This document shows positions 1,664-61,973 of a DNA stretch of 64,000 nt, in pieces. Position numbers and translations under genes: made by a program. The stretch comes from Octopus sinensis. Its lineage: Eukaryota. The stretch covers positions 7,502,001-7,566,000 of the forward strand of contig NC_043013.1 in NCBI RefSeq assembly GCF_006345805.1. Reading direction: 5' to 3'. Positions within the stretch are counted from its first letter, which is position 1, and the number at the start of each line of letters is the position of its first letter. A model generated the notes under the pieces. The model was given only the letters and a program-made list of their open reading frames with translations. It was not told the origin of the DNA and searched no databases.

Positions 1664-1926
1664 GACTTGACTTTTTAGTGCAGAAAACTCAGTCAGAATT
1701 CAAACCTGTGTTAATTGAAGTGAATGGACGTGATTGCCTGAAAAACTGCCAAATTAATGAATTCATCAATAGAGACAAACTTGGAGAAGTTGTCAAAGAA
1801 CTGGTGAATACCATGATTTCAAGATCCGAACGTTTTCTGGTGAAAGGTAAAACTGTTCTTTTCATCGGTGATGGAGGGTACGGAAAACGGTTTACTTTGA
1901 AGGACACCAGAGGCTACGGAATTAAG
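1664..1926 (+). CDS. CARNS1: Carnosine synthase-like, penultimate coding exon
   Basis: tttcag acceptor ends 1663; phase-1 entry gives (G)LDFLVQKTQSEFKPVLIEVNGRDC...KTVLFIGDGGYGKRF...YGIK; gtgaat donor at 1927. 263 nt; phases match both neighbouring exons. Confidence 0.9.
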
Positions 1927-2624: not shown

Positions 2625-2935
2625 CATTCTCTCTCACCAGCCTCTCTTGACAACCTCCATCAACTTCTCTCACCAACCTCCGACAGCCTCTCTCACCAAC
2701 CTCCAGCAACCTCTCTCACCAACCTCTCTTGACACCTCCATCAACTTCTCTCACCAACCTCTCTTGACAACCTCCATCAACTTCTCTCACCAACCTCTGA
2801 CAACTTCTCTCGCCAACCTCTGACAACTTCTCTCACCAACCTCCGACAACTTCTCTCACCAACCTCTGACAACCTCTCTCGCCAACCTCCGACAACCTCT
2901 CTCGCCAACCTCTGACAATCTCTCCCTCCTCCAGC
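2625..2935. repeat. C-rich minisatellite (~19-22-bp CTCTCTCACCAACCTC... units)
   Basis: Tandem variants within the CARNS1 intron. Confidence 0.88.
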
Positions 2936-3544: not shown

Positions 3545-4780
3545 ATTGTGTTGGTAAATGCAGAAAAACCTAAAAACTTGAGTCAAGATATCACTTTCGT
3601 ACCACATGATCTGACTGACTTAAAGCGGACGTATAAAAATGCCACCGAAATTATTGCCAAGCTTCAAGCTAGAGGTATAACAATTGATGGCTGTATTACT
3701 TTCTGGGATGAAAATGTCTGTCTTGTGGCAGCGATATGCGAACTTTTGAACCTAACAGGATCAAATTATAAAGCATACACCATTGCAAAAAATAAATACC
3801 TTACTTTTAAATGGCTACAGAAGCGAAAGGGAGATATTCCTCATTGGCCACGTACGTTTTTGTATTCTTCAAACGTTTATGAAATTAACACACAGTCTGA
3901 TATCTCCAAAATCTTCCAAAACAACAAGCCTTCCTTACCTTTGGTATTAAAATTTGAATACGGATCAGGTGCAATTGGTGTTAAACTTGTGCAAAACGAA
4001 GAAGAGTGCCAACAGTATTATCAACAGTTATCGGACTTAGAAATGCCTGGTGTTGGTCTATCTTTAGGTCGTTCTTTTATATTGATGGATTACTTACAAG
4101 GCACCGAACATGATGTGGATATCATAATATATAAGCGTAAATTAATCGCAGCTTTTGTGTCGGATAACGGTCCAACCAGGTTACCCAATTTCATAGAAAC
4201 GGCAGCTCTTTTGCCTTCGATTCTTTCAGATGAAAAGCAGAACCAACTGATCGTTGCTGCTTACCAATGTTGTCTTGAAATCGGTTTAGAAAGCGGCGTT
4301 TTTAACGTGGAAATGATTATGTCAGTGACGGGACCAAAACTTTGTGAGATTAATTCACGAATGGGTGGAGCCTATCTGAGGGACTGGATTAAATTGTGTT
4401 ATGGAGTTGATATTATGTTTTGCGACTTATTAATATCTCTGGGTATCGAACCACATGTAAAATGTAAATATAGTCAAACGTATTTAGCGGGGATTATATG
4501 CTTGGCTTCAGAGCATGCTGATATTTTCAAAGATGAGCAAAAAATGAATTTAATTCGAGCCAAACATGAATCCAAGCAAATACAATACAATCAATTTCTT
4601 GAAAAGCTTCATTTAGAATATGAAGAAGAGCTATACTTTGCAAGTATAGCAGTAATTGAGCCTGATCCAATAACTGCTAAAAGGTCATTGATAAAAATCT
4701 CAGAAGAACTTGGTATTAAAACCGATTCATACAATGTTGAACAATTCCTTAAATTCATTCCAAATGAGACACAAGAATAG
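3545..4780 (+). CDS. CARNS1: Carnosine synthase-like, terminal exon with ATP-grasp domain
   Basis: ccgcag acceptor ends 3544; 411-codon frame with DGCITFWD, KFEYGSGAIGV, GTEHDVD, AAFVSDNGPTRLP, GVFNVE, EINSRMGG, YLRDWI motifs characteristic of CARNS1; TAG 4778-4780; AATAAA 5325-5330. The three exons give 572 aa. Confidence 0.95.
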   Translation: MVLVNAEKPKNLSQDITFVPHDLTDLKRTYKNATEIIAKLQARGITIDGCITFWDENVCLVAAICELLNLTGSNYKAYTIAKNKYLTFKWLQKRKGDIPHWPRTFLYSSNVYEINTQSDISKIFQNNKPSLPLVLKFEYGSGAIGVKLVQNEEECQQYYQQLSDLEMPGVGLSLGRSFILMDYLQGTEHDVDIIIYKRKLIAAFVSDNGPTRLPNFIETAALLPSILSDEKQNQLIVAAYQCCLEIGLESGVFNVEMIMSVTGPKLCEINSRMGGAYLRDWIKLCYGVDIMFCDLLISLGIEPHVKCKYSQTYLAGIICLASEHADIFKDEQKMNLIRAKHESKQIQYNQFLEKLHLEYEEELYFASIAVIEPDPITAKRSLIKISEELGIKTDSYNVEQFLKFIPNETQE

Positions 4781-6693
4781 GGTGAAGTCTGGGAGTTATT
4801 TTTTTATGTGTGTCTTTATATATGTGTTGGGGAGATATGGAAAGTTGATACATCTTTAATTTCTTTTCTAAAGGGAGTTATTGTTTTTTAGCCCCAAGTC
4901 AACATTGATCCAAGCTGTGGCCATCTCATCTTTTCTATATCCATCTCGTCACCTGGACCTCCTCGAACAGGTTCAGAAACAAGTCTGTAATTTGATTGGT
5001 TCCCCCCTCTTCCTCTCTTAGTCTGTAATTTGATTGGTCCCTTGTCACAGTGACATGACAACTTAGTCTTTTCTATCTCTCCTACCACAGGATGTGCTCA
5101 GATGAATTTTCTTAGTCCTAGATCACATTGTGCCATATCACCTGACTCGTAACTCACAGCATCTTCATTCAAATTCTGTGACGCTTCCACGAATAAGTAA
5201 GTCTTTCTATAGTTGAAGCTTTTATCCTCGAACTACCAGAATTTGGAACTCTATTCCATCTCATTTTCTCCCTCCTTAGTCCCTTACACTAAGTGGCTTT
5301 CCGCCTTGTTTGGGACTTTGTAAGAATAAAAGAAAAACAGAATATCTCTGATTGCAATTATCAAAATTGATATCTTCTGAGAGAGAGAGACAGAGAGAGG
5401 GTGATAGGGCAGTAGAATCCTTTTCATATAAATGAACCCCTTTTCATATAAATGAATTTTTTCATGATCCCCAGGCCTGTTTACTCATTAAGCTAATTTT
5501 ATTAACAAACAAGTTTATATTCTATTTGAGAGATTGGATCAAGTTCTGTTATGGAGTTGATATTATGTTTTGTGCCTTATTAATATCTCTGGGTATTGAA
5601 CCACATGTAAAATGTAAATATAATCAAACCTGTTTAGCAGGGATCATGTGTTTGGCCTCAGAGCATGCTCATATTTTCAAAGACAAACAAAAGATGAATT
5701 TAATACGAGGGAAATACAATTCAACCAATGTTTTGAAAAGCCTTTTGCAGAAGATGCAGATGAGAGACCTTTTTCAAATAAAGCTGTAACTGAACCTGAT
5801 CAAGAAACTGCTAAAAGGTCATTGATAAAACCCTCAAAACTTGGCATTAAAACTGATTCATACAATGTTGAACAATTCCTTAAATTCATTCCAAATGAGA
5901 CAAAAGAATAGGGTGAAGTCTGGGGGTTATTGTTGTTTTATGTGTGTGTATGTATATATGTGTTGGGAAGATATGGACAGTTTATTCATCTTTTGATTTC
6001 TTTTCCAAAGGGAGTTATTGTTTTTTAGCCCCAAGTCAACATTGATCCAAGCTGTGGCCATCTCATCTTTTCTATATCCTTCTTGTCACTTAGATCTCCT
6101 CGAATGGGTTCAAAGCAAGTCTGTAATTTGATTGGTCTTTCTCTTTCTCTCTTTCTTATTCTGTAATTTGATTGGTCCTTTGTCACAGTGACATGACGTC
6201 TTAGTCTTTTCTATCTCTCCTACCACAGTAAGTGCTCAAATGAATTTTCTTAGTTCTAGAACACCTTATGCCATCTCACCTGACTCATAACTCAGTGTCT
6301 CCATCCAAATGCTGTCGTGCTTCCGCAAATAAGGAAGTCTTTCTACAGTTGTGGCTTTTTCCCTTGAAAAGCCAGAATTTGGAGCTCTCTTCCATCTCAT
6401 TTTCTCCCTTCTTGTGACCTGAACTCTTTCAAGTCTAAACTAAATTCATTCTTTGTGTCTTAATTACTCCTTCGTAGTCCCTTACACTCTGTGGCTTTTC
6501 ACCTTGTTTGGGACTTTATAAAAATAAAGGAGAAACAGAATAATCCTGATTACATTATCCAATGTGACATCTTCTGAGAGAGAGAGAGTAGGGCAGTAGA
6601 TCCCTTTTCATATAAATGAATCCCTTTTCCATAAATGAATTTTCTCGCAATCCCTGTGCCTATTTACACAATAAGCTGATTTTATTAACAAAC
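4373..6693 (+). repeat. Diverged tandem duplication (~1.15-kb unit) of CARNS1 3' CDS plus 3' UTR
   Basis: 4373-5510 aligns with 5523-6693 including stop codon, UTR, AATAAA (5325/6523) and the (GA)n tract; both end in ttttattaacaaaca. Confidence 0.92.
5523..5911 (+). pseudogene. 5'-truncated, frameshifted copy of the CARNS1-like C-terminus
   Basis: Aligns to 4373-4780 at an offset of ~1150; net 16-nt deletion near 5709 shifts the frame (ORFs 5526-5789 and 5648-5911 are the two halves); no homology upstream of 5522. Confidence 0.9.
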
Positions 6694-7250
6694 ATCAAAC
6701 TTACTTCAGACAGCTAAAGAATACCTAAGCTGAGATGTAAAACAGAAACCACATTTTCCCACATTCACAAAGAAGTTCTCGGCCTATTGTTTTAGCTTGC
6801 CTGCACCGAGTAATTAACGAGAAAAAGTATATTTGTTAAAGATTGTAACAACTTGCATTATAATCATCTTCAACATTGTAACAACATAATAATCAATCTT
6901 AATAAATGACCTTATTAATAATCAATTAAATAATTGTTCCTCATCGTTTTTTGTTATAATTGATCTAAACTCTTTACAAACACTTCTCACATTTTCAACT
7001 CTCACCAGGAAAATATATGTAACTATTGCCATAGATCTAACACAATGTCAAGTACTTCTAAGAATGAAATGAAGTTGTGTTGCTCACACAAAGGACAAGA
7101 AATTATCTGCATAGCAACACTTTCTGTTCATAGACAATTGGGTACAAAGTCAATATTTGAAGTCAGATGAATGCAGATAAATGATCCTAACCCACACTTG
7201 CGGGCACACATTTTACTTAAGAAGATTACTTGAGTATAGTAACCCTAGTA

Positions 7251-13251: not shown

Positions 13252-13875
13252 CACACATATATATATATACATATATATATATACATATATATACATATAT
13301 ATATATATACATATATATATATAATACATATATATATATATACATATACATATATACTATCCAACTCGTGGCCGTGGCACGTAAAATACTCCAATGCGAC
13401 CGTACGACAGGCACCCATGCCAACCCCCTTTGCTTCTGAAGACATGTTGGGGCAAGCGAAATCGAAATCGAATTGAACCAGCCAGGATCCCTGGTCTGGT
13501 GGTACGTAAAAAGCACTATCCGACTCGTGGCCGTGGCACGTAAAATACTCCAATGCGACCGTACGACAGGCACCCATGCCGACCCCCTTTGCTTGTGAAG
13601 ACATGTTGGGGCAAGCGAAATCGGAAACGAATTGAACCAGCCAGGATCCCTGGTCTGGTGGTACGTAAAAAGCACTATCCGACACGTGGCCGATGCCAGC
13701 ACCGCCTCGACTGGCTTCCGTGCCGGTGGCACATAAAATACACCAATCCGACCGTGGCCGTTGCCAGCCTCGCCTGGCACAGCCTTCTGGCTTCCCAGAA
13801 CCCCGGTCGAACCATCCAACCCATGCTAGCATGGAGAACGGACGTTAAACGATGATGATGATGATGATATATACA

Positions 13876-16250: not shown

Positions 16251-16830
16251 TAAGGGCCGGTTTTCCAGGTGTCTTGGCGTATAGGTTTCCCACCTGGACA
16301 GGATGCTGCTCCGTCGAAGGTGAGCTGCAAGATGCAGGAGGAAGAAAGTTTTGGCGAAAGAGTCAGCAGAAGTTCGCCATTACCTTCTGCCGCATGGAGC
16401 TTAGGTGTTTCGCTCATAAACACACACATCGCCCGGTCTGAGATTCGAACCGGCAATCCCTCGACTGCGAATCCGCTGCTTTAACCACTTGGCCATGTGC
16501 CTCCACAACGATGTAGGGTGGCATTACATCACCCTCACTGGAGGCACACGCCTCCTGTGTCCCTTCCTACTGGCCACAGCTTCGTAGTCTCCATTGCAGC
16601 TGTCCATGTCATGTCTTTCAGCTTTTGTAGTGTTCACAGAGCAACGAGTAGCAGTCATGATGTTGACATTTTAAGAGGCAGCACAAATCCTCAGGATGAA
16701 GGATGAAGGTAACTCTTTCCCAACATTCGGATGACTTCCAACCTTTCCGGTCATCCAACTTTTTTCTCAATGAGCAACTTTATGTGCTTCAATGCCTTTG
16801 ATTGTTCACCGATGCATCAAGCTGTTTCTG

Positions 16831-19800
16831 AAAAAAAGGAGACATATAAAAAGGGGCCATAAAAAAAGGAGACATATAAAAAGGGGACATAAAAAAAGGA
16901 GACATAAAAAGGAGACATAAAAAAGGGGACATAAAAAGGGAGACATAAAAAAAGGAGGCATAAAAAAAGGAGACAGAAAAGGAGACATAAAAAAGGAGAC
17001 ATAAAAAAAGGAGACATAAAATAAGGAGACATAAAAAAAGGAGACATAAAAAAGGAGACATAAAAAAGGAGACATAAAAAAGGAGACATAAAAAAGGAGA
17101 CATAAAAAAGGGAGACATAAAAAAGGGAGACATAAAAAAGGGAGACAAAAAAAGGAGACATAAAAAAGGGGACATAAAAAAGGAGACATAAAAAAGGGAG
17201 GCATGAAAAAAGGGAGATATAAAAAAAGGAGATATAAAAAAAGGAGACATAAAAAAGGAGACATAAAAAAAGGAGACATAAAAAAAGGAGACATACAAAA
17301 GGAGATATAAAAAAGGAGATATAAAAAAGGAGACATAAAAAAGGGAGACATAAAAAAGGAGATATAAAAAAGGGAGACAAAAAAAGGAGACATAAAAAAT
17401 GGAGACATAAAAAAGGGAGACAAAAAAAGGAGACATAAAAAAGGGGGACATAAAAAAAGGAGACATAAAAAAGGGAGACATAAAAAAGGAGACATAAAAA
17501 AGGAGACGTAAAAAAGGAAACACAAAAAAGAGACATAAAAAAGGGAGACATAAAAAAGGAGACATAAAAAAGGAGATATAAAAAAGGGAGACAAAAAAGG
17601 AGACATAAAAAAAGGAGACAAAAAATGGAGACAAAAAAAGGAAACAAAAAAGGAGACAATAAAAGGAGACATAAGAAAAGGAGTCAGAAAAGGACACATA
17701 AAAAAGGAGACCTAAAAAAGGAGACATTAAAAAGGAGACATAAAAAAAGGAGAAAAAATGGAGACAAAAAGGAGACATAAAAAAGAGACATAAAAAAAGG
17801 AGTCAAAAAAGGACACATAAAAAGGAGACATAAAAAAAGAGACAAGAAGACATAAAAAGGAGACATTAAAAAGGAGACATAAAAAAGGGAGGCATAAAAA
17901 AAGGAGATATAAAAAAGGAGACAAAAAAAGGAGACATTGAAAAAAAGGAACATAAAAAAAGGAACACAAAAAAATGAGACATAAAAAAGGAGACCTAAAA
18001 AAGGAGACATTAAAAAGGAGACATAAAAAAGGAGATATAAAAAAGGAGACACAGAAAAGGAGACATACAAAAAGGAGACATAAGAAAAGGAGATATAAAA
18101 AAGGAGACAAAGAAAAGGAGACATACAAAAAGGAGACATAAGAAAAGGAGATATAAAAAAAGGAGACAAAAAAAGGAGACATAAGAAAAGGAGACATAAA
18201 AAAGGAGACATAAAAAAGGAAACACAAAAAAGGAGACAAAAAAAGGGAACATAAAAAGGAGATATAAAAAAGGAGACAAAAAAGGGGACATAAAAAAGGA
18301 GACATAAAAAAGGAGACAAAGAAAAGGAGACATACAAAAGGAGACATAAGAAAAGGAGATATAAAAAAGGGGACATAAAAAAAGGAGACATAAAAAAAGA
18401 GACATAAAAAAGGGGACATAAAAAGGAGACATAAAAAAAGGAGGCATAAAAAAAGGAGACAGAAAAGGAGACATAAAAAGGAGACATAAAAAAAGGAGAC
18501 ATAAAATAAGGAGACATAAAAAAAGGAGACATAAAAAGGAGACATAAAAAGGAGACATAAAAAGGAGACATAAAAAGGAGACATAAAAAGGAGACATAAA
18601 AAGGAGACATAAAAAGGAGACAAAAAAAGGAGACATAAAAAAGGGGACATAAAAAGGAGACAAAAAAAGGGAGGCATGAAAAAAGGAGATATAAAAAAGG
18701 AGACATAAAAAAGGAGACATAAAAAGGAGACATAAAAAAGGAGACATAAAAAAGGAGACATACAAAAAGGAGATATAAAAAAGGAGATATAAAAAAGGAG
18801 ACATAAAAAGGAGACATAAAAAAGGAGATATAAAAAAGGAGACAAAAAAAGGAGACATAAAAAATGGAGACATAAAAAAGGAGACAAAAAAAGGAGACAT
18901 AAAAAAGGGGACATAAAAAAAGGAGACATAAAAAGGAGACATAAAAAAGGAGACATAAAAAGGAGACGTAAAAAAGGAACACAAAAAGACATAAAAAGGA
19001 GACATAAAAAAGGAGACATAAAAAAAGAGATATAAAAAAGGAGACAAAAAAAGGAGACATAAAAAAAGGAGACAAAAAATGGAGACAAAAAAGGAAACAA
19101 AAAGGAGACAATAAAAGGAGACATAAGAAAAGGAGTCAGAAAAGGACACATAAAAAGGAGACCTAAAAAAGGAGACATTAAAAAGGAGACATAAAAAAAG
19201 GAGAAAAAATGGAGACAAAAAGGAGACATAAAAAAAGGAGACATAAAAAAGGAGTCAAAAAAGGACACATAAAAAAGGAGACATAAAAAAAGAGACAAGA
19301 AGACATAAAAAAGGAGACATTAAAAAGGAGACATAAAAAAGGGAGGCATAAAAAAAGGAGATATAAAAAAAGGAGACAAAAAAAGGAGACATTGAAAAAA
19401 AGGAAACATAAAAAAGGAAACACAAAAAAAGGAGACATAAAAAAGGAGACATAAGAAAAGGAGATATAAAAAAAGGAGACATAAAAAAGGATATAAAAAA
19501 GGAGACAAAGAAAAGGAGACATACAAAAAGGAGACATAAGAAAAGGAGATATAAAAAAGGAGACAAAGAAAAGAGACATACAAAAAGAGACATAAGAAAA
19601 GGAGATATAAAAAAAAGAGACAAAAAAAGGAGACATAAGAAAAGGAGACATAAAAAGGAGACATAAAAAGGAGACATAAAAAGGAGACATAAAAAAGGAG
19701 ACATAAAAAGGAGATATAAAAAAGGAGACAAAAAAGGGGACATAAAAAAGGAGACATAAAAAAGGAGACAAAGAAAAGGAGACATACAAAAAGGAGACAT

Positions 19801-19941
19801 AAGAAAAGGAGATATAAAAAAGGGGACAAAAAAAGGAGACATAAAAAAAGGAGACATAAAAAAGGAAACACAAAAAAAGGAGACAAAAAAAGGGGACATA
19901 AAAAAGGAGACATAGAAAAGGAGACAAAGAAAAGGAGACAT
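16831..19941. repeat. 3.1-kb satellite of 13-14-bp units (AAAAAGGAGACAT) with higher-order repeat
   Basis: Rare variants recur 1452-1485 bp apart. Confidence 0.95.
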
Positions 19942-20047
19942 CAAATGTAGCCCAAACAAGTGGAAATTTAGTGAACTGTCCTCTATGTAAAATATATAAT
20001 GTACAATAACGAAGCAAATGAAAGGTACAGTTGATGAACATACAAAC

Positions 20048-21447: not shown

Positions 21448-21653
21448 TAGAAACAGTGAGTGAAGCAGGACTGACCTTATAAATAATTTCAATTTAAGAG
21501 GAAACTGGGATGGAGCAGGTGATGGAGGGAAGAAGAAGAAGAAGAAGAAGAAGAAAAAGAAGATTACTTACTACAAGAACTGGGAGTAACTTGAGACGAA
21601 TGTAGATATTCATAGTCTTTAAGTATTTGTCCATTAAAGCTGCATTGGCATCT

Positions 21654-21661
21654 AGAAAGAA

Positions 21662-21706
<45 letters not shown>

Positions 21707-22438
21707 AGAAAGGAAGAAAGGAAGGAAGAAAGAAAGGAAGGAAGGAAGAAAGAAAGGAAGGAAGAAAGAAAGGAAGGAAGGAAGAAAGAAAGGAAGGAAG
21801 GAAGAAAGGAAGGAAGAGAGAGAGAGAAAGGAAGAAAGAAAAAGAAGGAAGGAAGGACGAAAGAAAGAAAGGAAGGAAGGAAAGAAGGAAGGACAAAAGA
21901 AAGGAAGAAAGAAAGAAAGGAAGGAAGGAAGGAAGGAAGGAAGGAAAGAAGGACGAAAAGAAGGAAGGAAGGAAGGAAGAGAGGGAGAAAGAAAGGAAGG
22001 AAGAAAGGAAGGAAGAGAGGGAGAAAGAAAGAAAGGAAGGAAGGAAGGAAGAAAGAAAGAAAGAAAGGAAGGAAGAAAGAAAGAAAGGAAGGAAGAAAGG
22101 AAGGACGAAAAAAAGAAAGAAAGAAAGGAAGGAAGGAAAGAAGGAAGGACAAAAGAAAGGAAGGAAGGAAGGAAGAAGGAAGGAAGGAAGGAAGGAAGAA
22201 AGGAAGGAAGGAAGGAAGAAAGGAAGGACGAAAGGAAGGAAGGAAGGAAGGAAGAGAGGGAGAAAGAAAGAAAGGAAGAAAGAAAGGAAGGAAGATAGGG
22301 AGAAAGAAAGAAAGGAGGGAAGGAAGAAAGAAAGAAAGAAAGGAAGGAAGGAAGAAGAAGAAAGGAAGGAAGAAAGAAAGAAGGAAGGAAGAAAGAAAGA
22401 AAGAAAGGAAGGAAGGAAGGAAGAAAGAAAGAAAGGAA

Positions 22439-22472
<34 letters not shown>

Positions 22473-22797
22473 AGGAAGAGAGGGAGAAAGAAAGAAAGGA
22501 AGGAAGGAAGAAAGAAAGAAAGAAAGGAAGGAAGAAAGAAAGGAAGGAAGGAAGAAAGAAAGAAAGAAAAGGAGAGGGAGAAAGAAAGAAAGGAAAGAAG
22601 GAAGAAAGAAAGAAAGGAAGGAAGAGAGGGAGAAAGAAAGAAAGGAAGGAAGGAAGGAAAAGAGGGACAAAGAAAGGAAGGAAGGAAGGAAGGAAGGAAG
22701 AAAGAAAGGAAGGAAGAAAGAAAGAATGAAAGAAAGGAAGAGAGGGAGAAAAAAAGAAAGAAAGGAAGGAAGAGAGGGAGAAAGAAAGAGAGAGAGG

Positions 22798-22831
<34 letters not shown>

Positions 22832-22907
22832 AAGGAAGAAAGAAAGAAGGCAGGAAAGAAGGAAAGAAAGAAAGAAAGAAGGAAGGAAGATAGAAAGAAA
22901 GAAAGAA
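21654..22907. repeat. 1.25-kb homopurine (GAAA/GAAG)n tract
   Basis: Almost exclusively A/G on +. Confidence 0.95.
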
Positions 22908-23261
22908 GTGATGAACACCTCCTCCTTTGGATAATTAGATGAAATATTTGCCTCAAAATTTTTTATAGGTGCAAGCATGGCTGCATGGTAAAAGTTTGCT
23001 TTTCAGCCAAATGGTTCTGAGTTCAGTCCCCCTATGTAGCACCTTGGACAGATGTCGTCCACTATAGCCCAGGTTAACCAAAGCCTTGGTAGATAACCAA
23101 AGATTTGGTAGATAGAAACTGAAAGAAACCTTGTGCATATATATGTATGTATGTATTCTTTTTTATTATGGTGACGTAAACACACCACCATCGGTTGTCA
23201 AGCGATGTTGGGGGGGACAACACAGACACACAAACGTATACACACACCCACACACACATAC

Positions 23262-25908: not shown

Positions 25909-26190
25909 AAACTATATATATACATATATATATATATGGCACTTGTGCTGGTGGCACGTGAAAAAACATTCAAGCGAGGTCGTTGCCAGTACCGCCTGAC
26001 TGGCCCCCATGCTGGTGGCACGTAAAAGCACCCACTACACTCTCAGAGTGGTTGGCGTTAGGAAGGACATCCAGCTGTAGAAACTCTGCCAGATCAAGAT
26101 TGGAGCTTGGTGCAACCATCTGGTTCACCAGTCCTCAGTCAAATCGTCCAACCCATGCTAGCATGGAAAGTGGACGTTAAACGAAAAAGG

Positions 26191-27785: not shown

Positions 27786-28260
27786 CAGGGTGGTGCACAA
27801 GAAAGTAGCCTAGATTCCATAACAAAGTGTAAATACAGAAATAAATTTAACCATGCGAAGAAGCACCTGGCCTTTTGTATGCAAGTCTTATTGTGTTATT
27901 TCAAATACTTGTAACTGCTGAACAAGGATGGTGCACTAGTTGACTGTTTGCTACATTATCCTCATCACATCAGTCGACTGTAACATTGCATTGAGTGAAC
28001 ATCTCTAGCTTTTTCTGCAAGTTGACATGCCCAATAGAAGAAAAAGTGGAGATTGTGGCAGTATATGTGAGGACAGGTTCTGCTAAACAAACGTGTGAAA
28101 TGTTTGAAATCAAGTTTCTGGGTAAAGGTTTACCAGCAAATAGAATGATACAAATGCTGGTTAAAAAGTACCATGCAACGAGGTCAGTGCACAACACCCC
28201 AAAACAAAGAGTCCCCATAGTTCAAACACTGGAAGTTATTCAGGACATTTGTCTAAGGAT
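27786..28260 (+). mobile_element. Tc1/Tc3-like 5' fragment (HTH region)
   Basis: CAGGGTGGT end; EEKVEIVAVYVRTGS...KKYHATRSV resembles a transposase N-terminal HTH. Confidence 0.55.
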
Positions 28261-28704
28261 TACTCAAAGTTTAAAGTTGAAGCTATATCATTTAACAGGT
28301 GTACAGGAATTAAAAATGGATGACAAGAGAAAACAAGTTATTGCACATGGCTTCTGAATAACAGGGTTGCATATGGCTTCTGAATAACAGTTGCACATGA
28401 TTTCTGAATGGCTATAATGAGCTACAGCCAAGGAATTGAAGGAAATTATACAATATCAAATGGATGGCAGAACTGGCAGAGCACAAGGCAAAACTCAGTG
28501 TTGTCGAGTGGTTGCATTCCTTTACATTTTGAATTCAAGTATTACTCACGTGCACTTTACCATACATCCTTCTGAAATTAATAGAATAAGTAGATGTTGA
28601 TGAAATAATTACTGGGGGTTGATATAATCAAGGAAATTCTCCCACACGGTCGCAGTCCAATGATTGAAACCAACTATGAAGAGAGTCAAGTCTCCAAAAC
28701 ATAC

Positions 28705-30353: not shown

Positions 30354-32136
30354 TTTAATGCAACTGTCTTCACGCTGAAACATAACCAATATCTGCAAAT
30401 AAAGAAAAAAACAAAAAAACAAAAACAAATGTCCTCACCTGTTTCAAAAGAAAAGGTAATATTTCCCCTGTGGCCAGACAGGTATTGCATTTAAAAAATT
30501 TTTTTTTACAGAAGATTGTAAATGAGTAGCACTGCTTATTTGAGGATGACACTCATGTACAGTAATTATGTGACAATGCTTATGCACATGCAATAGGTTT
30601 CTTTCAGTTCCCATCGACCAGATCCACTCTCAAGGGTTTGGTTGGCCTAGGGCTATAGGAGAAGATGCCCAAAGTGCCACACAGCGGAACTGAACCTAAA
30701 ACTATGTGGTTTGGAAGCAAACTGCTTAACAACACAACTATGTAGCATGTGTGTGTGTATAATTATATTTACACACACACATATATACACATAAGAGTAC
30801 CATTGAGTGAGATCGTTGCCAGAGCATGCCGATGGCCCGTTAAAAACACCATTCGAGCGTGATCGTTACCTGCGTCGCCTTATTGGAACTTGTGCTGGTG
30901 GCACATGAAAAAAACATTTGAGCGAGGTCGTTGCCAGTGCCACTGGACTGGCTCATGTGCAGGTGGCACATAAAAAGCACCATTTGAACATGGCCGATGC
31001 CAGTACTGCCTGACTGGCCCTTGTGCCGATGGCACGTAAAAGCACCCACTACACTCTCGGAATGGTTGGCGTTAGGAAGGGCATCCAGCTGTAGAAACTC
31101 TGCCAGATCAGATTGGAGTCTGGTGCAGCCATCTGGTTCGCCAGACCTCAATCAAATCGTCCAACCCATGCTAGCATGGAAAGTGGACATTACACAATGA
31201 TGATGATATATGTGTACATATAATTATATATATATGTGTGTGTGTGTGTATTTATATTCATGACTCCTTGTCTTGATATCATTATCCGTATCATCATTTA
31301 ACGTCCACTTTTCCATGCTGGCATGGGTCAGCCAGAGTTTATTGAAGATAATTTCTATAGCTGGATGCCTTTCCTGTTACCAACTCTCTCACCTGTTTCC
31401 AAGCAAAGTAATATATCCCCTTCGCCCAGACATATTGTTGCAAGATATCAGAAATGAATGACACTGCTTCTACAATAGGGACAATCACTTATAACAATCA
31501 TGTGGTGTCAAGACAAAGAGACACAAATATACACATACACTGACACTCATACACACACACACAAGCATACATACATACTTACACACATCACTAGATCATA
31601 CATACATACAAATCTCATTTAAGATCCACAAAGATCAGAACTTAACTATTGGTCTAAAATGGATATGCAATCTATGTGGGTGTCTTTTCAAAACATTGTC
31701 TGGTTTAAAAAGCCACATGAGATGCCATGATGTCTGAAGGAAAGAAAAGAGTCTGGAGCTATGCTGAACAGCTCCTCAACAAAGCTGTCCTTAAGGAAGC
31801 CAAACAATATCACATGTAATCTCTCAATGATATGGCTAGACTACAAGGCATTCAACTCTGTACCTCACTCATAGATGATAGAATCACTACACCTTGTCAA
31901 AGTACCAACTGCTATAGTGAATGACATTGAAAGACTAACCACAACATGGTCCACACAGTTATCACAAACAACTTCTGAAGCAACACCTATCATTACAAAC
32001 AGAATTAAGCTATCAACAGGTATGTTCCATGGTGATAGTTTATCTGTAATGTCGTTTGTACTCACAGCGAATCCCGTGTCAGCCCTATGAACAAAATGCC
32101 AAGACTACATGCTGGGATATACTGAAAAGAATAAAA

Positions 32137-46373: not shown

Positions 46374-47537
46374 ATGTCAAATATGTTGTTTCATAATTCT
46401 CATCCTCCTTGGGGTTAATTACCGAAATAACTATGAATGACACATTGCTGGATAGAAGAGATGGTATACTATTTCTACACAGTTCCTGCTCATTTGACTT
46501 GGGCCCTGATGTGATTGGTTGGTTGGTATTTCATACTGGTGAAAAAACAATTATTTTCCAAGCACCCATATACATACATATACACATACATGTATATACT
46601 CTTTTCCTCTTTTACTTGTTTCAGTCACATGATTAAAGCCATGCTGGAGCACCGCCTTTAGTTGAGCAAATCGACCCCAGAACTTATTCTTTGTAAGCCT
46701 ATTACTTATTCTGTTGATCTCTTTTGCCAAACCGCTAAGTTACGGGGATGTAAACACACCAGCATTGGTTGTCAAGCGATGTTGGGGGGACAAACACAGA
46801 CACACAAACATATACACACACATATATATATACATATAAACGACAGGCTTCTTTCAGTTTTTGTCTACCAAATCCACTCACAAGGTGTTAAAGCCAGTTG
46901 GATTATTAAAAAATAACTAACAGTGACAGAAGCAGTATTAATTGTAATTATTGATGTATAGCGAGATACAGGTATGGCTAGGCACAAATGTGGCTTCATA
47001 GTAAGAAGTTTGCTTCCCAATCACATGGTTCTACGTTTGCCTTTCGAGGTTCCATGTTTTCTACATTAGCACAGCTGGGGCAGTAGGGGCGATCCACCAC
47101 GGGAGGCACTTTTAAAGGAGTACTACTTTTGGGACTGCTGTAGGCAATATGTTTTTTTTTTTTTTGTGGAGTCTGGGGGCGGCAAACGGAAGGGTCGTCC
47201 ACACACAGTGTGTGACCTTGGGCAAGTGTCTTATACTTTAGCCCTAGGCTGACCAAAAGCTAATGAGTGGAACTGGCAGGTGGAAACTGAAAGAAGCCCA
47301 TTATATATATGGTGGCACGTTAAAAGCACCAACCGATCGTGGCCGATGCCAGACCCCCCTGGCACCTGTGCAGGTGGCACGTAAAAAGCACCCACAACAC
47401 TCATGGAGTGGTTGGCGTTAGGAAGGGCATCCAGCTGTAGAAACACTGCCAGATCAGACTGGAGTCTGGTGCAGCCCCTGGCTTCCCAGACCCGGTCAAA
47501 CCGTCCAACCCGTGCTAGCGCGGAAAACGGACGTTAA

Positions 47538-49612: not shown

Positions 49613-51279
49613 AAGAAATAAAAGATAAAACTTTAACTTATTCTGTCTTCACTTTTGTATTTTATTTTGCATTGTTTCAGCCTAACATTTTATCCTTTTT
49701 TTTTTTAACTTTTTAGTTAGAGGGGTAAGGGCAGTGCCTATGGCCATTCAATTTTTTTCAGGGCATCTAAGATTAGTGGAAAGAAAGGTGGACATTAACT
49801 TTGAACTGGGGGCCTGACCTGAATGCTTGCAACAAAGGGAACTCTCCTAAAAATATGCAAAGGACCAAGTGGTGGGGGTGTTGAAGTGAGCAACAGATTA
49901 AGACTGTAACTCAAGAATTCCAAATACAAAGAGTTGAAATAAATATCTCAAAGAATCTTGGCCATCCCTCTAGCAATTCTTGCAATCCCCACCACCCCTG
50001 AATTTTCTTTTACATTCTTTTACTTCTTTTGGACTGTGAACATGCTGGGGCCACTGTCTTGAAGGATTTTGAAGCCCAGTGCTTAGTTTTAAATTCAGTA
50101 CTCGTTCTATCAGTCTCTTTCACCAACCTGAAAAAATATGGAGATGTAAACAAATCAACACTAATAGTCAAGCAGTGTAGAAACAAGCATAAGAACAATC
50201 ACACACACACACACACATTTACATACATACAATGGCCTTCCACACAGTTTCTTTCTACCAAATTCAGTTTCCATCTACCAAATCCACTCATAAGGCTTTG
50301 GTCGGCCCGAGGCTATAGTAGAAGACTCTTGCCCAAGGTGCCACACAGTGAGAATGAACCTGAAACCACATGGTTGCAAAGTGAGCTTCTTAACCACACA
50401 CACTCATGCCTGCACTTGGTACTTTATTTTATTGACCCCTAATGAAACAGATTAAATGCAATAGACATCAGTTGGATTTGACCTCTGAGTGCAAAAGTCA
50501 GGATGAACATCATCATCATCATCATCGTTTAACGTCCGTTCTCCATGCTAGCATGGGTTGGACAGTTCGACCGGGGATCTGGGAAGCCAGAAGGCTGCAC
50601 CAGGCTCCGGTCTTATCTGGCAATGTTTCTACAGCTGGATGCCCTTCCTAACGCCAACCACTCCGTGAGTGTAGTGGGTGCCTTTTACGTGCCACCTGCA
50701 CTGGTGCCAAGCGAGGCTGGCATCGGCCACGGTCGGATTGGTGCATTTTACGTGCCACCTGCACGGAAGCCAGTCGAGGCGGCACTGGCTTCGGCCACGA
50801 TTCGGATGGTGCTTTTTATGTGCCACCGACACGGAAGGCATTTTGTCCAGTTCTTTAATAACTCTACCAAACAGCCTAGATGTATATGTAGGGTTGAGGT
50901 CTAGATGAACAACACACTATTAAAACCTTCGGATCACTTAATCTCAGATGATATCACACAGTGACTTCATGTATATAATAACATCGTGAAAATTACATTC
51001 CAAAGATGGCTTTTTTTCTCAAACTGGGGAAATACTTCAGCTCTGGTCAGTTCCTAATCTTCTACAAGACTCAGTTTAAACCTCCAGTAGTTCTGAAGAC
51101 GTAGGTGCAGGCATGGCCGGGTGGTAAGAAGCTTGCTTCCCAACCACATGGTTCTGGGTTCAGTCCTACTGCATGGCACCTTGGACGAGTGTCTTCTACT
51201 GTAGCCTCAGGCCAACCAAAGCCTTGTGAGTGGATTTGGTAGATGGAAACCGAAAGAATACTATTATATATATATTTAT

Positions 51280-56212: not shown

Positions 56213-58652
56213 TCATCATCATCATCATCATCATCATTTAACGTCCGCTTTCCATGCTAGCATGGGTTGGACGGTTCAACTGGGGTCTGGGGAGCCCGAA
56301 AGCTGCACCAGTCCAGTCAGATCTGGCAGTGTTTCTATAGCTGGATGCCCTTCCTAACGCCAACCACTCCGAGAGTGTAGTGGGTGATTTTATGTGCCAC
56401 CGACACAGGTGCCAGACGAGGCTGGCAAACGGCCACGCTCGGATGGTGTTTTTTATGTGCCACCGACACAGGTGCCAGACGAGGCTGGCAGACGGCCACG
56501 CTCGGATGGTGTTTTTTATGTGCCACCGACACAGGTGCCAGATGAGGCTGGCAAACGGCCACGATCGGATGGTGCTTGTTACGTGCCCACAGCACGGAGG
56601 CCAGTCGATGCGGTACTGGCTACGGCCACGTTCGGATGGTTTTCTTGTGTGCCACGTGCCACTGGCACTGGTACCACAAAGATACAAATTCCATTGATGT
56701 TCATCTATTTTGATTTGTTTTGATTTTCACTTGCCTCAACAGGTCTTCACAAGTGTCACAAGAAGGAAGGTATGCACAGGTGGACTGACTACGTCCCAGG
56801 TAGGGGCCATGGGTTATGGCCTGACTAGTCTTGCCGGGTCTTCGGATGGTTTTTTATGTGCCACCGACACAGGTGCTAGATGAGGCTGGCGAACGGCCAC
56901 GATCGGATGGTGTTTGTCATGTGCCCACCGCACTGACTACAGCACTGATGGATTTCTTGTGTGCCACAGGCACTGGTACCACAAGATACAAATTCATTGA
57001 TGTTCATCTATTTTGTCTATTTTGATTTGATTGATTTGATTTTCACTTGCCTCCAACGGTCTTCACAAGTGTCCAAGAAGGAAGGTATGCACAGGTGGAC
57101 TGACTAGTCTTGCCGGGTCTTCGGAAGGTGTTTTTATGTGCCCACCGGACACAGGTGCCAGATGAGGCTGGCGAACGGCCATGATCGGATGGTGTTTGTT
57201 ACGTGCCCACAGCACGGAGGCCGGTCGATGCGGAACTGGCTACAGCCACGTTCGGATGGTTTTCTTGTGTGCCACCGGCACTGGTACCACAAAGATACAG
57301 ATTCCATTGATGTTCATCTATTTTGATTTGTTTTGATTTTGATTTTGATTTTCACTTGCCTCAACAGGTCTTCACAAGTGTCACAAGAAGGAAGGTATGC
57401 ACAGGTGGACTGACTACGTCCCAGGTAGGGGCCATGGGTTATGGCCTGACTAGTCTTGCCGGGTCTTCGGATGGTGTTTTTATGTGCCACCGACACAGGT
57501 GCCAGATGAGGCTGGCGAACAGCCACGATCGGATGGTGTTTGTCATGTGCCCACAGCACGGAGGCCAGTCGATGCGGTACTGGCTACGGCCACTTTCGAA
57601 TGGTTTTCTCTTGTGTGCCACCAGCACTGGTACCACAAAGATACAAATTCCATTGATGTTCATCTATTTTGATTTGTTTTGATTTTGATTTTGATTTTGA
57701 TTTTCACTTGCCTCACAGCCTCACAAGTATCACAAGGAGGAAGTATGCACAGGTGGACTGACTACATCCCAGGTAGGGGCCATGGTTTATGGCCTGACTA
57801 GTCTTGCCGGGTCTTCGGATGGTGTTTTTATGTGCCACCGACACAGGTGCTAGATGAGGCTGGCGAACGGCCACGACCGGATGGTGTTTGTTATGTGGCC
57901 ACAGCACGATGGCCAGTGATGCGGTACTGACTACGGCCACGTTCGGATGGATTCTTGTGTGCCACCAGCACTGGTACCACAAGCGGTACTGACTACGGCC
58001 ACGTTCGGATGGATTCTTGTGTGCCACCGGCACTGGTACCACAAAGATACAAATTCCATTGATGTTCATCTATTTTGATTTGTTTTGATTTTCACTTGCC
58101 TCAACAGGTCTTCACAAGTGTCGCAAGAAGGAAGGTATGTACAGGTGGACTGACTACGTCCCAGGTAGGGCCCACGGGTTATGACCTGACTAGTCTTGCC
58201 AGGTCTTTGGATGGTGTTTTTATGTGCCACCATGTTCCCATAGCACGGAGGCGAGTCGATGCGGTACTGGCTACGGCCACGTTCGGATGGTTTTCTTGTG
58301 TGCCACAGGCACTGGTACCACAAAGATACAAATTCCATTGATGTTCATCTATTTTGATTGATTTTCACTTGCCTCAGCAGGTCTTCACAAGTGTCACAAG
58401 AAGGAAGGTATGCACAGGTGGATCAACTACGTCCCAGGTAGGGGCCACGGGATATGGCCTGACTAGTCCTGCCGGGTCCTCTCATGCACAGCACACTTCC
58501 ATAGGACTCGGTCTTCAGTCATTTCCTTGGTGAGACCTAAAGTTCGAAGGTCGTGCTTCACCACCTCGTCCCAGGTTTTCCTGGGTCTACCTCTTCCACA
58601 GGTTCCCTCAACTGCTAGGGTGTAGCACTTTTGCACACAACTATCTTCAGCC
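56213..58652 (-). mobile_element. 5'-truncated RTE-clade LINE with tandemly expanded 3' UTR
   Basis: 58652-58463 encodes ...VEGTCGRGRPRKTWDEVVKHDL...MTEDRVLW (RTE ORF C-terminus pattern); six UTR units; terminal ggcgttaggaagggcatccag...gcatggaaagcggacgttaaa(tga)n. Confidence 0.85.
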
Positions 58653-58724
<72 letters not shown>

Positions 58725-59413
58725 AGGCAGTACTGGCAAATTCGAGCAAGGTCGTTGCCAGTACCGCCTGACTGGCCCCCGTGCCGGTGGCACGTAAAAG
58801 CATCCACTACACTCTCGGAGTGGTTGGCGTTAGGAAGGGCATCCAGCTGTAGAAACTCTGCCAGATCAAGACTGGAGCTTGGTGCAGCCATCTGGTTCGC
58901 CAGCCCACAGTCAAACTGTCCAACCCATGCTAGCATGGAAAGCGGACGTTAAACGACGACGATGATGATGATGATATATACATATATTAGGTTGTCAAGA
59001 AAGTTCTTGCGGAATTTTAAATTTTGGTTTTAAATTATGTATTTTCAAATTAATTTTCATTTGATTTTATATATCATTTTAAAGCCCATTTTTCGCTCTA
59101 TCTCAAGGTGTTACTCTTTTTCTTTTTGAATAATTAGGCCATTTGGTGGTCTGTGGCCAGTTTCATCCATCAAACAAAAATCCTCAATTTAATAATACTA
59201 TTTACAAACTTTATGCTTGGAATGACCAATTTTAAATACTGTTGGAACTTACACACAAGGTGCAGGAAACTTATAAGTATACTATTCTGCTAAAATAATA
59301 GAACTGCAGATGCAATATCCCTGCATATCTCACGTCTATTTTCATTCCTTCACTTCATTCTCTCTTTCATACCTTATCTAGAATAATTATTGCTTAACCA
59401 TTTTATCACACCA

Positions 59414-61600: not shown

Positions 61601-61973
61601 TCAAGATCCCCTCCTCCAATGCCCCCTCACCTCTCATAAGAGTTTTTTTTTTTGTCTTCATGACCCTGTCAGTAGGTGCCACTTAAGTAGGTGCCACGTA
61701 AAAGCACCCAGTCCACACTGTAAAGCGGTTGGTGTTCAGAAAGGCATCCAGCTATAAAAAACCTTGTCAAAATGGCCTCACCTGTACTTGTGCCATGTAA
61801 AAAGCACTAAGTCCACCCTGCTGAGTGGTTGGTGCTAGGAAGGGCATCTAGCTGTAAAAATCCTGCCAAAACAGTTACAGAAGAGTGTTGCTGGCTTCTG
61901 CCTGGCCAGCTCTTGTCAAACCATCCCACCCATGCCAGCATGGAAGGCAGACATTAACCGATGTTGATGATGA

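What the first reader, a model, noticed from the sequence alone, without database searches (positions are those of the whole stretch)
4373..5911. CARNS1 paralog remnant: purifying selection plus a 31-codon amino-acid burst
Seen (hand count): over the first 62 aligned codons the copies differ by 15 synonymous-only vs 7 replacement codons. In the block 4583-4675 vs 5717-5809 they differ by 17 replacement vs 3 synonymous codons of 31. The last 24 codons differ at only 3 nt. Inference: the fragment is not dead-on-arrival but the tail of a once-functional tandem paralog. The block QYNQFLEKLHLEYEEELYFASIAVIEPDPIT / QFNQCFEKPFAEDADERPFSNKAVTEPDQET may be a diversified specificity region, or the flanks were homogenised by gene conversion. 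The remnant keeps residues closer to vertebrate CARNS1 as I recall it (CALL, GIMC, RPF), hinting that the intact copy is the derived one.
Basis: partly seen in the sequence, partly recalled or inferred. Interest (0 to 1): 0.75.

Follow-up and report, generated by a model that had tools for sequence, protein, structure and literature searches.

The report
Broken tandem copy of gene tail
A carnosine-synthase-like gene is followed by a broken, frameshifted second copy of its last 136 codons plus downstream DNA; the uneven differences between the copies suggest the fragment once belonged to, or was copied from, a working gene, which is an ordinary stage of gene-family turnover.

Summary
Window 4372-5521 and 5522-~6710 are a head-to-tail duplication of a ~1.15 kb unit. 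The unit holds the last 136 codons of the terminal exon (3546-4780) of a CARNS1-like ATP-grasp gene plus ~730 nt of 3' flank.

- Unit 2 starts mid-exon.
- The non-coding flank gives a neutral yardstick of 13.3% divergence.

Against that yardstick:
- Segment A (62 codons) has omega 0.07-0.14 and silent sites at 27%.
- Block B (31 codons) differs at 28% with omega about 1.2.
- The last 35 codons plus the next 180 nt differ at only about 7%.

A dead-on-arrival partial duplicate with one rate fits A poorly (P 0.005-0.03) and B poorly (P 0.0005-0.004).

My best reading (about 0.5) is a mosaic. The remnant's first 300 nt spent most of their history under protein constraint, in a second paralog here or elsewhere. 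The 3' part was later homogenised by gene conversion, and the copy was then truncated and frameshifted.

The "burst" is neutral-rate change on a variable beta-hairpin with a low-confidence loop. It is not shown positive selection. This is ordinary biology of low interest.

The parts
1664..1926 (+). Upstream coding exon of the live CARNS1-like gene, with acceptor ...tttcag| and donor AAG|GTGAAT.
   Evidence: ORF 1678-1938; splice sites read; in frame with the terminal exon.
3546..4780 (+). Terminal exon of the live CARNS1-like ATP-grasp gene (acceptor ccgcag|ATT, stop TAG 4778-4780). It carries the EINSRMGG catalytic motif just before the duplication edge.
   Evidence: ORF; Pfam ATP-grasp_4, ATPgrasp_Ter and ATPgrasp_N; homologues named carnosine synthase; AF2 model pLDDT 89.4; Foldseek best hits BacD, BL00235 and RizA.
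4372..5521 (+). Tandem duplication unit 1: the last 136 codons of the live exon plus ~740 nt of 3' flank.
   Evidence: the repeat finder families D5-D15; blastn; global alignment.
5522..6710 (+). Tandem duplication unit 2, the remnant. It begins mid-exon with no upstream coding sequence. Its flank has 59-nt (6413-6471) and 13-nt length differences from unit 1.
   Evidence: tblastn of the 410-aa exon finds no other piece in the 64 kb window.
4373..4558 (+). Segment A of the live copy (partner 5523-5708), 62 codons. It has 23 nt differences: 3/3/17 by codon position, 18 transitions and 5 transversions. Omega is 0.07-0.14. The model shows helices 277-285 and 289-297, strand 312-319 and helices 320-341.
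4562..4577 (+). 16 nt present in the live copy and absent from the remnant (gap between 5709 and 5710). This shifts the frame of the remnant, and the frame of A then stops at 5787-5789.
   Evidence: Alignment; translations.
4583..4675 (+). Block B of the live copy (partner 5717-5809), 31 codons. It has 26 nt differences: 8/13/5 by codon position, 11 transitions and 15 transversions. Omega is 1.15-2.2. It covers exon residues 346-376: strand, acidic loop (pLDDT ~66), strand.
4676..4780 (+). Segment C of the live copy (partner 5810-5911): the last 35 codons including the stop. It has 6 nt differences plus a 3-nt deletion in the remnant; dS 0.11.
4672..4954 (+). Cold tract spanning the stop codon (partner about 5806-6091). 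It has 20 differences in 280 aligned nt and holds a 73-nt identical run at 4870-4942. It is a candidate recent gene-conversion tract or a conserved 3'UTR element.
   Evidence: Scan statistic P=0.005; longest identical run.
5325..5330 (+). AATAAA, the likely polyadenylation signal of the live gene. The homologous AATAAA in unit 2 is at 6523. The live transcript would therefore end before the remnant.
   Evidence: Motif search. The role is inferred, because no transcript data are available.

Best explanation
The second copy is a dead fragment: it is truncated mid-exon, frameshifted, and lies downstream of the live gene's likely poly(A) signal. Its history is mosaic.

- Its first ~300 nt (5522-5809, partner 4372-4675) separated from the live gene about twice as long ago as the rest.
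- For most of that time this stretch was held under protein-level constraint. It therefore comes from a working CARNS1-like copy. That copy was either a full-length tandem paralog later cut down by a deletion, or another paralog that exchanged this stretch by gene conversion with one of the two copies.
- The remaining ~840 nt (the last 35 codons plus the 3' flank) were homogenised with the live gene by later gene conversion, most recently over 4672-4954.
- The 31-codon 'burst' is change at about the neutral rate (omega near 1) in a beta-hairpin with a floppy acidic loop that the family tolerates as variable. Decay in the remnant adds to it.

Shown: the tandem unit, the frameshift, the heterogeneity in divergence and the omega values. 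Inferred: the order of events, the conversion, and the working source.
For: - Structure of the repeat.
- Divergence: A 12.4% (silent positions 27%), B 28%, C 5.9%, non-coding 13.3%.
- Heterogeneity is significant: hot block P=0.011 and cold tract P=0.005. Silent sites of A+B against silent sites of C plus the flank give P=0.011.
- A has omega 0.07-0.14.
- A dead-on-arrival model gives P 0.005-0.03 for the synonymous share in A. If the high silent rate of A is taken as the local neutral rate, that model predicts 16-20 replacements against 7 seen (P 0.0008-0.008).
- Both copies are equally far from the outgroup in A (9:9 polarised sites, 58.1% identity each).
- Both lineages carry derived residues in B. 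That fits shared neutral drift rather than one-sided selection.
- B covers strand 345-349, a loop of pLDDT ~66, and strand 363-371. The B-equivalent is 28-38 residues long across 42 homologues.
Against: - The unit begins mid-exon. No trace of the other 275 codons of a second copy exists in 64 kb. A one-step partial duplication is structurally simpler.
- All tests rest on 23 and 26 differences.
- 4 of the 16 silent changes in A are CpG losses. Without them the silent excess over non-coding falls to P=0.04.
- The count of replacements in A is by itself compatible with a dead-on-arrival fragment (P 0.07-0.27).
- Silent positions inside B (16%) match the young non-coding yardstick, not the old one, although the difference from A is not significant (P=0.30).
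- No third sequence closer than 53% identity was available. Neither conversion nor branch-specific selection could be tested directly.
Confidence: 0.5

Rival explanations
1. Dead-on-arrival partial tandem duplication. One event copied 4372-5521, and the fragment never worked. The live copy stayed constrained while the fragment drifted. The uneven divergence comes from local mutation-rate variation: CpG decay in A, an indel-associated substitution cluster next to the 16-nt deletion in B, and chance or 3'UTR constraint in the cold tract.
For: - The unit edge lies mid-exon with a simple junction, and no other gene piece is present.
- Overall coding divergence (14.5%) is close to non-coding divergence (13.3%).
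- Replacements in A (7) are within expectation.
- Indel density in the coding part (2 in 405 nt) is about half that of the flank. This is expected if only the fragment accepts indels.
- B directly abuts the 16-nt deletion. It also has a different spectrum, 11 transitions to 15 transversions against 63 to 32 in the flank (P=0.04).
- Nearly every CpG in either copy has changed in the other.
Against: - The synonymous share in A gives P 0.005-0.03.
- B exceeds the yardstick with P 0.0005-0.004.
- Any appeal to a locally higher mutation rate makes the shortage of replacements in A significant (P 0.0008-0.008).
- The fragment is no further from the outgroup than the live copy in A.
Confidence: 0.3
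2. Adaptive burst in the live gene. After a young partial duplication, block B of the live copy changed under positive selection, for example to retune substrate or partner binding. The fragment preserves the older state.
For: - Replacement positions of B differ at 34% against 13.3% in the flank (P=1e-4). B's silent positions (16%) match the flank.
- The live copy has lost the family-conserved Pro102 (14 of 16 outgroups) and Asn105.
Against: - Omega in B is not significantly above 1 (positions 1+2 against position 3, P=0.09).
- Polarised changes in B are split about evenly between the copies. The remnant has I106K, F89C and I109T.
- The loop has low model confidence and variable length.
- This reading does not explain the silent excess in A.
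Confidence: 0.08
3. The remnant is still expressed as an alternative 3' end of the gene, through read-through and a cryptic splice from near 4360 into about 5532. This would keep segment A under selection.
For: - A cryptic donor (ATGG|GTGGAG, ~4360) and an AG at 5530-5531 would join in frame. This is read and is inference only.
- Segment A of the remnant has no stop codon.
Against: - Both candidate sites are poor. The acceptor has G at position -3 and no pyrimidine tract.
- The join would delete the family's most conserved GG-YLR residues.
- An AATAAA at 5325 lies before the remnant.
- The frame of A ends in 27 unrelated codons after the 16-nt deletion.
- No transcript data are available.
Confidence: 0.03
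4. Assembly artefact: the second unit is a mis-placed haplotype or a collapsed or expanded repeat.
For: None directly. It cannot be excluded without reads.
Against: - The units differ by 13-28% and by about 12 indels, including 59-nt and 16-nt ones. That is far beyond allelic variation.
- The window has no Ns.
- The junction is a single clean head-to-tail join inside an exon.
Confidence: 0.03

Closest known systems
Partial (truncated) tandem gene duplicates and unprocessed pseudogene fragments
   Same: It is a head-to-tail copy of a unit that starts inside an exon and includes non-coding flank. It has no upstream exons or promoter of its own, and it carries a frameshift and indels.
   Different: Segment A shows a stronger bias towards silent changes than a fragment that was neutral from birth should show. 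Divergence along the unit is also significantly uneven.
Gene-conversion mosaics between neighbouring duplicates, as described for globin, opsin and other tandem families (from general knowledge)
   Same: There are sharp shifts in divergence along the repeat: 28%, then 6-7%, then 15%. A 73-nt identical run sits in a 13%-diverged background. The two copies lie only 1.1 kb apart in direct orientation.
   Different: Only two sequences are available. Tract ends, donor and direction are therefore inferred and not tested.
CARNS1 / ATPGD1, the animal carnosine synthase of the ATP-grasp superfamily
   Same: The live exon matches the ATP-grasp Pfam families and has the E-x-N and R-M-G-G motifs. Its best named homologues are carnosine synthase 1, at 36-39% identity to vertebrates.
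   Different: The nearest database protein is only 53% identical. Activity and substrates are unknown. Both copies here have degraded the family's EEP-x-C-N-I-A-V strand motif.
Bacterial L-amino acid ligases BacD/YwfE (3VMM), BL00235 (3VOT) and RizA (4WD3)
   Same: They are the best structural matches to the whole 410-residue model, C-terminal tail included (E 1e-20 to 1e-22, TM 0.65-0.69).
   Different: Sequence identity is 12-18%. Sequence-level homology stops near exon residue 302, before most of A and all of B. The role of the hairpin therefore cannot be transferred from these structures.

Membership tests
ATP-grasp / CARNS1-like enzyme (live copy) | ATP-grasp domain recognised by family profiles | tested here: met
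   PF13535, PF15632, PF02655 and PF18130 score above their cut-offs. There are 85 homologues, several of them named carnosine synthase.
ATP-grasp / CARNS1-like enzyme (live copy) | Catalytic E-x-N Mg-binding strand and R-x-G-G loop intact | tested here: met
   E267, N269, M272, R271, G273 and G274 are invariant or nearly invariant columns, and the live exon has them.
ATP-grasp / CARNS1-like enzyme (live copy) | Carnosine (beta-alanyl-histidine) synthase activity | not testable with these tools
   This needs an enzyme assay.
ATP-grasp / CARNS1-like enzyme (live copy) | Complete gene including the N-terminal half | tested here: inconclusive
   Two exons with canonical splice sites lie in the window. 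Anything further upstream lies beyond position 1.
Unprocessed tandem partial duplicate | Direct adjacency, unit containing both coding and non-coding DNA, single junction | tested here: met
Processed (retro-) pseudogene | Copy ends at the mRNA 3' end with a poly(A) tract, lies dispersed, has target-site duplications | tested here: not met
   Homology runs ~190 nt past the AATAAA. There is no poly(A) tract, and the copy is in tandem with its source.
   Omega is 0.07-0.14 in A, with P 0.005-0.03 against dead-on-arrival. This rests on 23 differences, and there is no close outgroup.
   There is no further CARNS1-like piece in the 64 kb window. The 53%-identical locus L001 has a single tail. No closer genomes could be reached.
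Gene-conversion mosaic | Divergence along the repeat more uneven than a uniform rate allows | tested here: met
   Permutation scan: hot window P=0.011, cold window P=0.005.
Gene-conversion mosaic | Tract supported by a third sequence (phylogenetic incongruence) | not testable with these tools
   No sequence closer than 53% amino-acid identity is available.
Positively selected specificity region | dN/dS significantly above 1 | tested here: not met
   Omega in B is 1.15-2.2 from 31 codons. Positions 1+2 against position 3 give P=0.09.
Positively selected specificity region | Residues line the substrate pocket | tested here: inconclusive
   B covers strand, loop (pLDDT ~66) and strand, 75-105 residues after the RMGG loop. 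Model coordinates are not exposed, so distances could not be measured.

The most novel reading that the evidence does not exclude
The two versions of the 31-codon hairpin are the surviving record of two CARNS1-like enzymes with different acceptor or partner specificity. One was lost by truncation. Alternatively, the remnant still supplies an alternative C-terminus.
Probability: 0.06. Interest if true: 0.5.

Novelty: new member of a known kind. Interest (0 to 1): 0.2.

Why it matters
The finding shows how a short coding remnant should be judged. The non-coding part of the same duplication unit gives an internal neutral yardstick, and with it the 'burst' looks like neutral-rate change rather than adaptation. 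If the once-functional reading holds, this lineage had at least two CARNS1-like genes and lost one. That is a small datum on turnover of dipeptide-synthase genes in an invertebrate. It opens no long-standing question.

Tried and rejected
- **Closer relatives to polarise changes.** The protein search gave nothing above 53% identity. Exact-protein look-ups of the live exon and of both remnant ORFs found no record. I ran no further search on the remnant peptide, because any close paralog shares many 5-mers with the live exon and would already have appeared.
- **Locus L001 (the 53% homologue).** It has one tail only and no flank homology. Its silent sites are saturated (about 36% identity at third positions), so only amino-acid polarisation was usable.
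- **Templated patch.** Neither version of block B has a donor elsewhere in the window.
- **Structured RNA in the conserved 3' stretch.** There are no Rfam or tRNA hits in the window.
- **Solved CARNS1 structure.** None exists. The nearest are BL00235 and BacD at E 1e-9 to 1e-5.
- **Literature on cephalopod or mollusc carnosine synthase paralogs.** The search returned nothing relevant.
- **Processed pseudogene and haplotype mis-assembly.** I rejected both on structure.
- **Alternative-exon use.** I examined this by eye and judged it unlikely: the sites are poor and the GG-YLR motif would be lost.
Full report
**What is there.** The window carries the 3' end of a CARNS1-like ATP-grasp gene.
- An exon at 1664-1926 (donor AAG|GTGAAT) is followed by a terminal exon at 3546-4780 (acceptor ccgcag|ATT, stop TAG).
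- The terminal exon matches the ATP-grasp Pfam families.
- It has 85 homologues, several of them named carnosine synthase. The best is only 53% identical.
- It folds with high confidence (pLDDT 89.4) into an L-amino-acid-ligase-like structure. BacD 3VMM, BL00235 3VOT and RizA are the top Foldseek hits. No CARNS1 structure is in the PDB.

**The repeat.** The finding is part of a head-to-tail duplication of a ~1.15 kb unit, 4372-5521 and 5522-~6710.
- The unit starts inside the terminal exon, directly after the RMGG catalytic loop.
- It contains the last 136 codons and runs ~740 nt into the 3' flank, past an AATAAA at 5325 whose partner is at 6523.
- Nothing else in the 64 kb resembles the gene.
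- Compared with unit 1, unit 2 lacks 16 nt (4562-4577) and 3 nt (near 4700). Its flank has further length differences of 59 and 13 nt.
The frame of the first stretch stops at 5787-5789.
- Today the copy is therefore a dead fragment.

**Checking the observation.** The counts are exact.
- Segment A (62 codons): 15 synonymous-only and 7 replacement codons.
- Block B (31 codons): 3 synonymous-only and 17 replacement codons.
- The last 24 codons: 3 nt differences.

**An internal yardstick.** The unit includes 715 aligned non-coding positions, and their divergence of 13.3% (JC 0.146) is a neutral reference of the same age and place. Against it:
- **A** differs at 12.4% overall. By codon position the counts are 3, 3 and 17 of 62, so silent positions are at 27%.
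- **B** differs at 28%, spread 8, 13 and 5 of 31 over the three positions. Its spectrum is richer in transversions (11 transitions to 15 transversions, against 63 to 32 in the flank).
- **C**, the last 35 codons, differs at 5.9%.

A permutation scan shows that B is a significant hot window (P=0.011). It also shows that 4672-4954 is a significant cold window (P=0.005). The cold window holds a 73-nt identical run.

| Segment | dN/dS | dS |
|---|---|---|
| A | 0.07-0.14 | 0.27-0.70, depending on method |
| B | 1.15-2.2 | 0.16-0.34 |
| C | about 0.5 | 0.11 |

**Was the fragment dead on arrival?** Under that model the live copy is constrained and the fragment is neutral.
- About 40-46% of the differences in A should then be synonymous, given the observed transition bias and CpG hypermutability.
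- Seeing 16 or more of 23 has P 0.005-0.03.
- The 7 replacements alone are compatible with the model, which expects 9.5-12.6 (P 0.07-0.27). The misfit is an excess of silent changes: 16 against 6.7-8.6 expected (P 0.0015-0.016).
- Four of those silent changes are CpG losses in the fragment. Without CpG sites the silent excess over non-coding falls to P=0.04.
- If one instead takes the high silent rate as the true local neutral rate, the model predicts 16-20 replacements in A against 7 seen (P 0.0008-0.008).
- B exceeds the yardstick with P 0.0005-0.004.

A single-age, never-functional fragment therefore fits poorly. All of this rests on a few dozen differences and on tests chosen after seeing the data.

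**Polarity.** Only distant outgroups exist, so polarity is limited to conserved amino-acid columns.
- The live copy is derived at A32D (4424), M56I (4496), P102Y (4634) and N105S.
- The fragment is derived at F89C, I106K, I109T and I123P.
- In A the two copies are equally far from the nearest homologue: 9 against 9 polarised sites, and 58.1% DNA identity each.
- The fragment has thus not visibly run ahead of the live gene in A, and both lineages contributed to B.

**Where block B sits.** Block B covers exon residues 346-376.
- In the model these are a strand (345-349), an acidic loop with the lowest confidence of the C-terminal half (pLDDT about 66), and a second strand (363-371).
- Across 42 homologues the equivalent stretch is 28-38 residues long, and it is among the most variable parts of the tail.
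- Model coordinates are not exposed, so I could not measure its distance from the catalytic residues.
- From memory of the BacD literature, the acceptor pocket is built around the R-x-x-G-W loop. That loop corresponds to the RMGG loop lying before segment A, not to this hairpin. This is a lead, not a test.

**Synthesis.** One assumption explains both anomalies: the first ~300 nt of the unit (A plus B) are about twice as old as the rest.
- A then shows constraint on both lineages.
- B shows neutral-rate change in a tolerant hairpin, plus decay in the fragment.
- C and the flank were homogenised later by gene conversion between the two neighbouring copies, most recently over 4672-4954.
- The fragment's A-B stretch then derives from a working CARNS1-like copy. 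That copy was either a full-length tandem paralog later truncated by deletion, or another paralog that exchanged this stretch with one of the two copies.

I give this reading about 0.5. The main rival (about 0.3) is a one-step partial duplication that never worked. In that case the unevenness would be due to CpG decay, a substitution cluster next to the 16-nt deletion, and chance. Positive selection on the live copy's hairpin (about 0.08), use as an alternative 3' exon (about 0.03) and mis-assembly (about 0.03) are less likely, for the reasons listed with each rival.

**Verdict.** The phenomenon is a decaying tandem gene fragment with a probably mosaic history. It is a new example of a well-known kind and of low general interest. 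Nothing in this work required a referred step.

Noticed in passing
window 50545-50904; also ~1063-1326, 13657-13832, 25945-26164, 30897-31177, 47311-47519, 56254-56598, 58773-58936, 61779-61941: An interspersed repeat of about 290 nt (SINE-like) occurs at least 9 times on both strands at 72-92% identity. It produces the recurring spurious ORFs 'MLAWVGQFDRGSGKPEGC...' and 'MDGSTGV...'.
   Followed up: partly
window 16789-20041 and 21494-22978: Two long low-complexity minisatellite arrays rich in pyrimidines on one strand. They give overlapping pseudo-ORFs of 200-520 aa ('FYVSFFMSPF...', 'FLSSFLPSF...'). They are not genes.
   Followed up: no
window 2629-2924: A 23-nt tandem repeat of about 12 copies (CAACCTCCGACAACCTCTCTCAC) lies inside the intron between the two CARNS1-like exons.
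   Followed up: no
window 4870-4942 = 6007-6079: A 73-nt stretch is perfectly identical between the two units, in a background of 13% divergence. It is either the core of a recent conversion tract or a conserved 3'UTR element. There is no Rfam match.
   Followed up: partly
window 27995-28357 (+): A 120-aa ORF has a DUF4817 helix-turn-helix domain (E 6.5e-7). It is probably a remnant of a transposase N-terminus.
   Followed up: partly
window 4423, 4447, 4479, 4488, 4723 and 10 sites in 4947-5463: Of 17 CpG dinucleotides present in either unit, 15 differ in the other. All 5 changed coding CpGs are CpG in the live copy and TG, CA or CC in the fragment. This points to strong CpG hypermutability, which suggests methylation, and to one-sided loss in the fragment's coding part.
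   Followed up: partly
whole window: The window has 37.7% GC and abundant TA, TACA and CATA microsatellites. It has no tRNA or Rfam hits and only one recognisable gene in 64 kb.
   Followed up: partly
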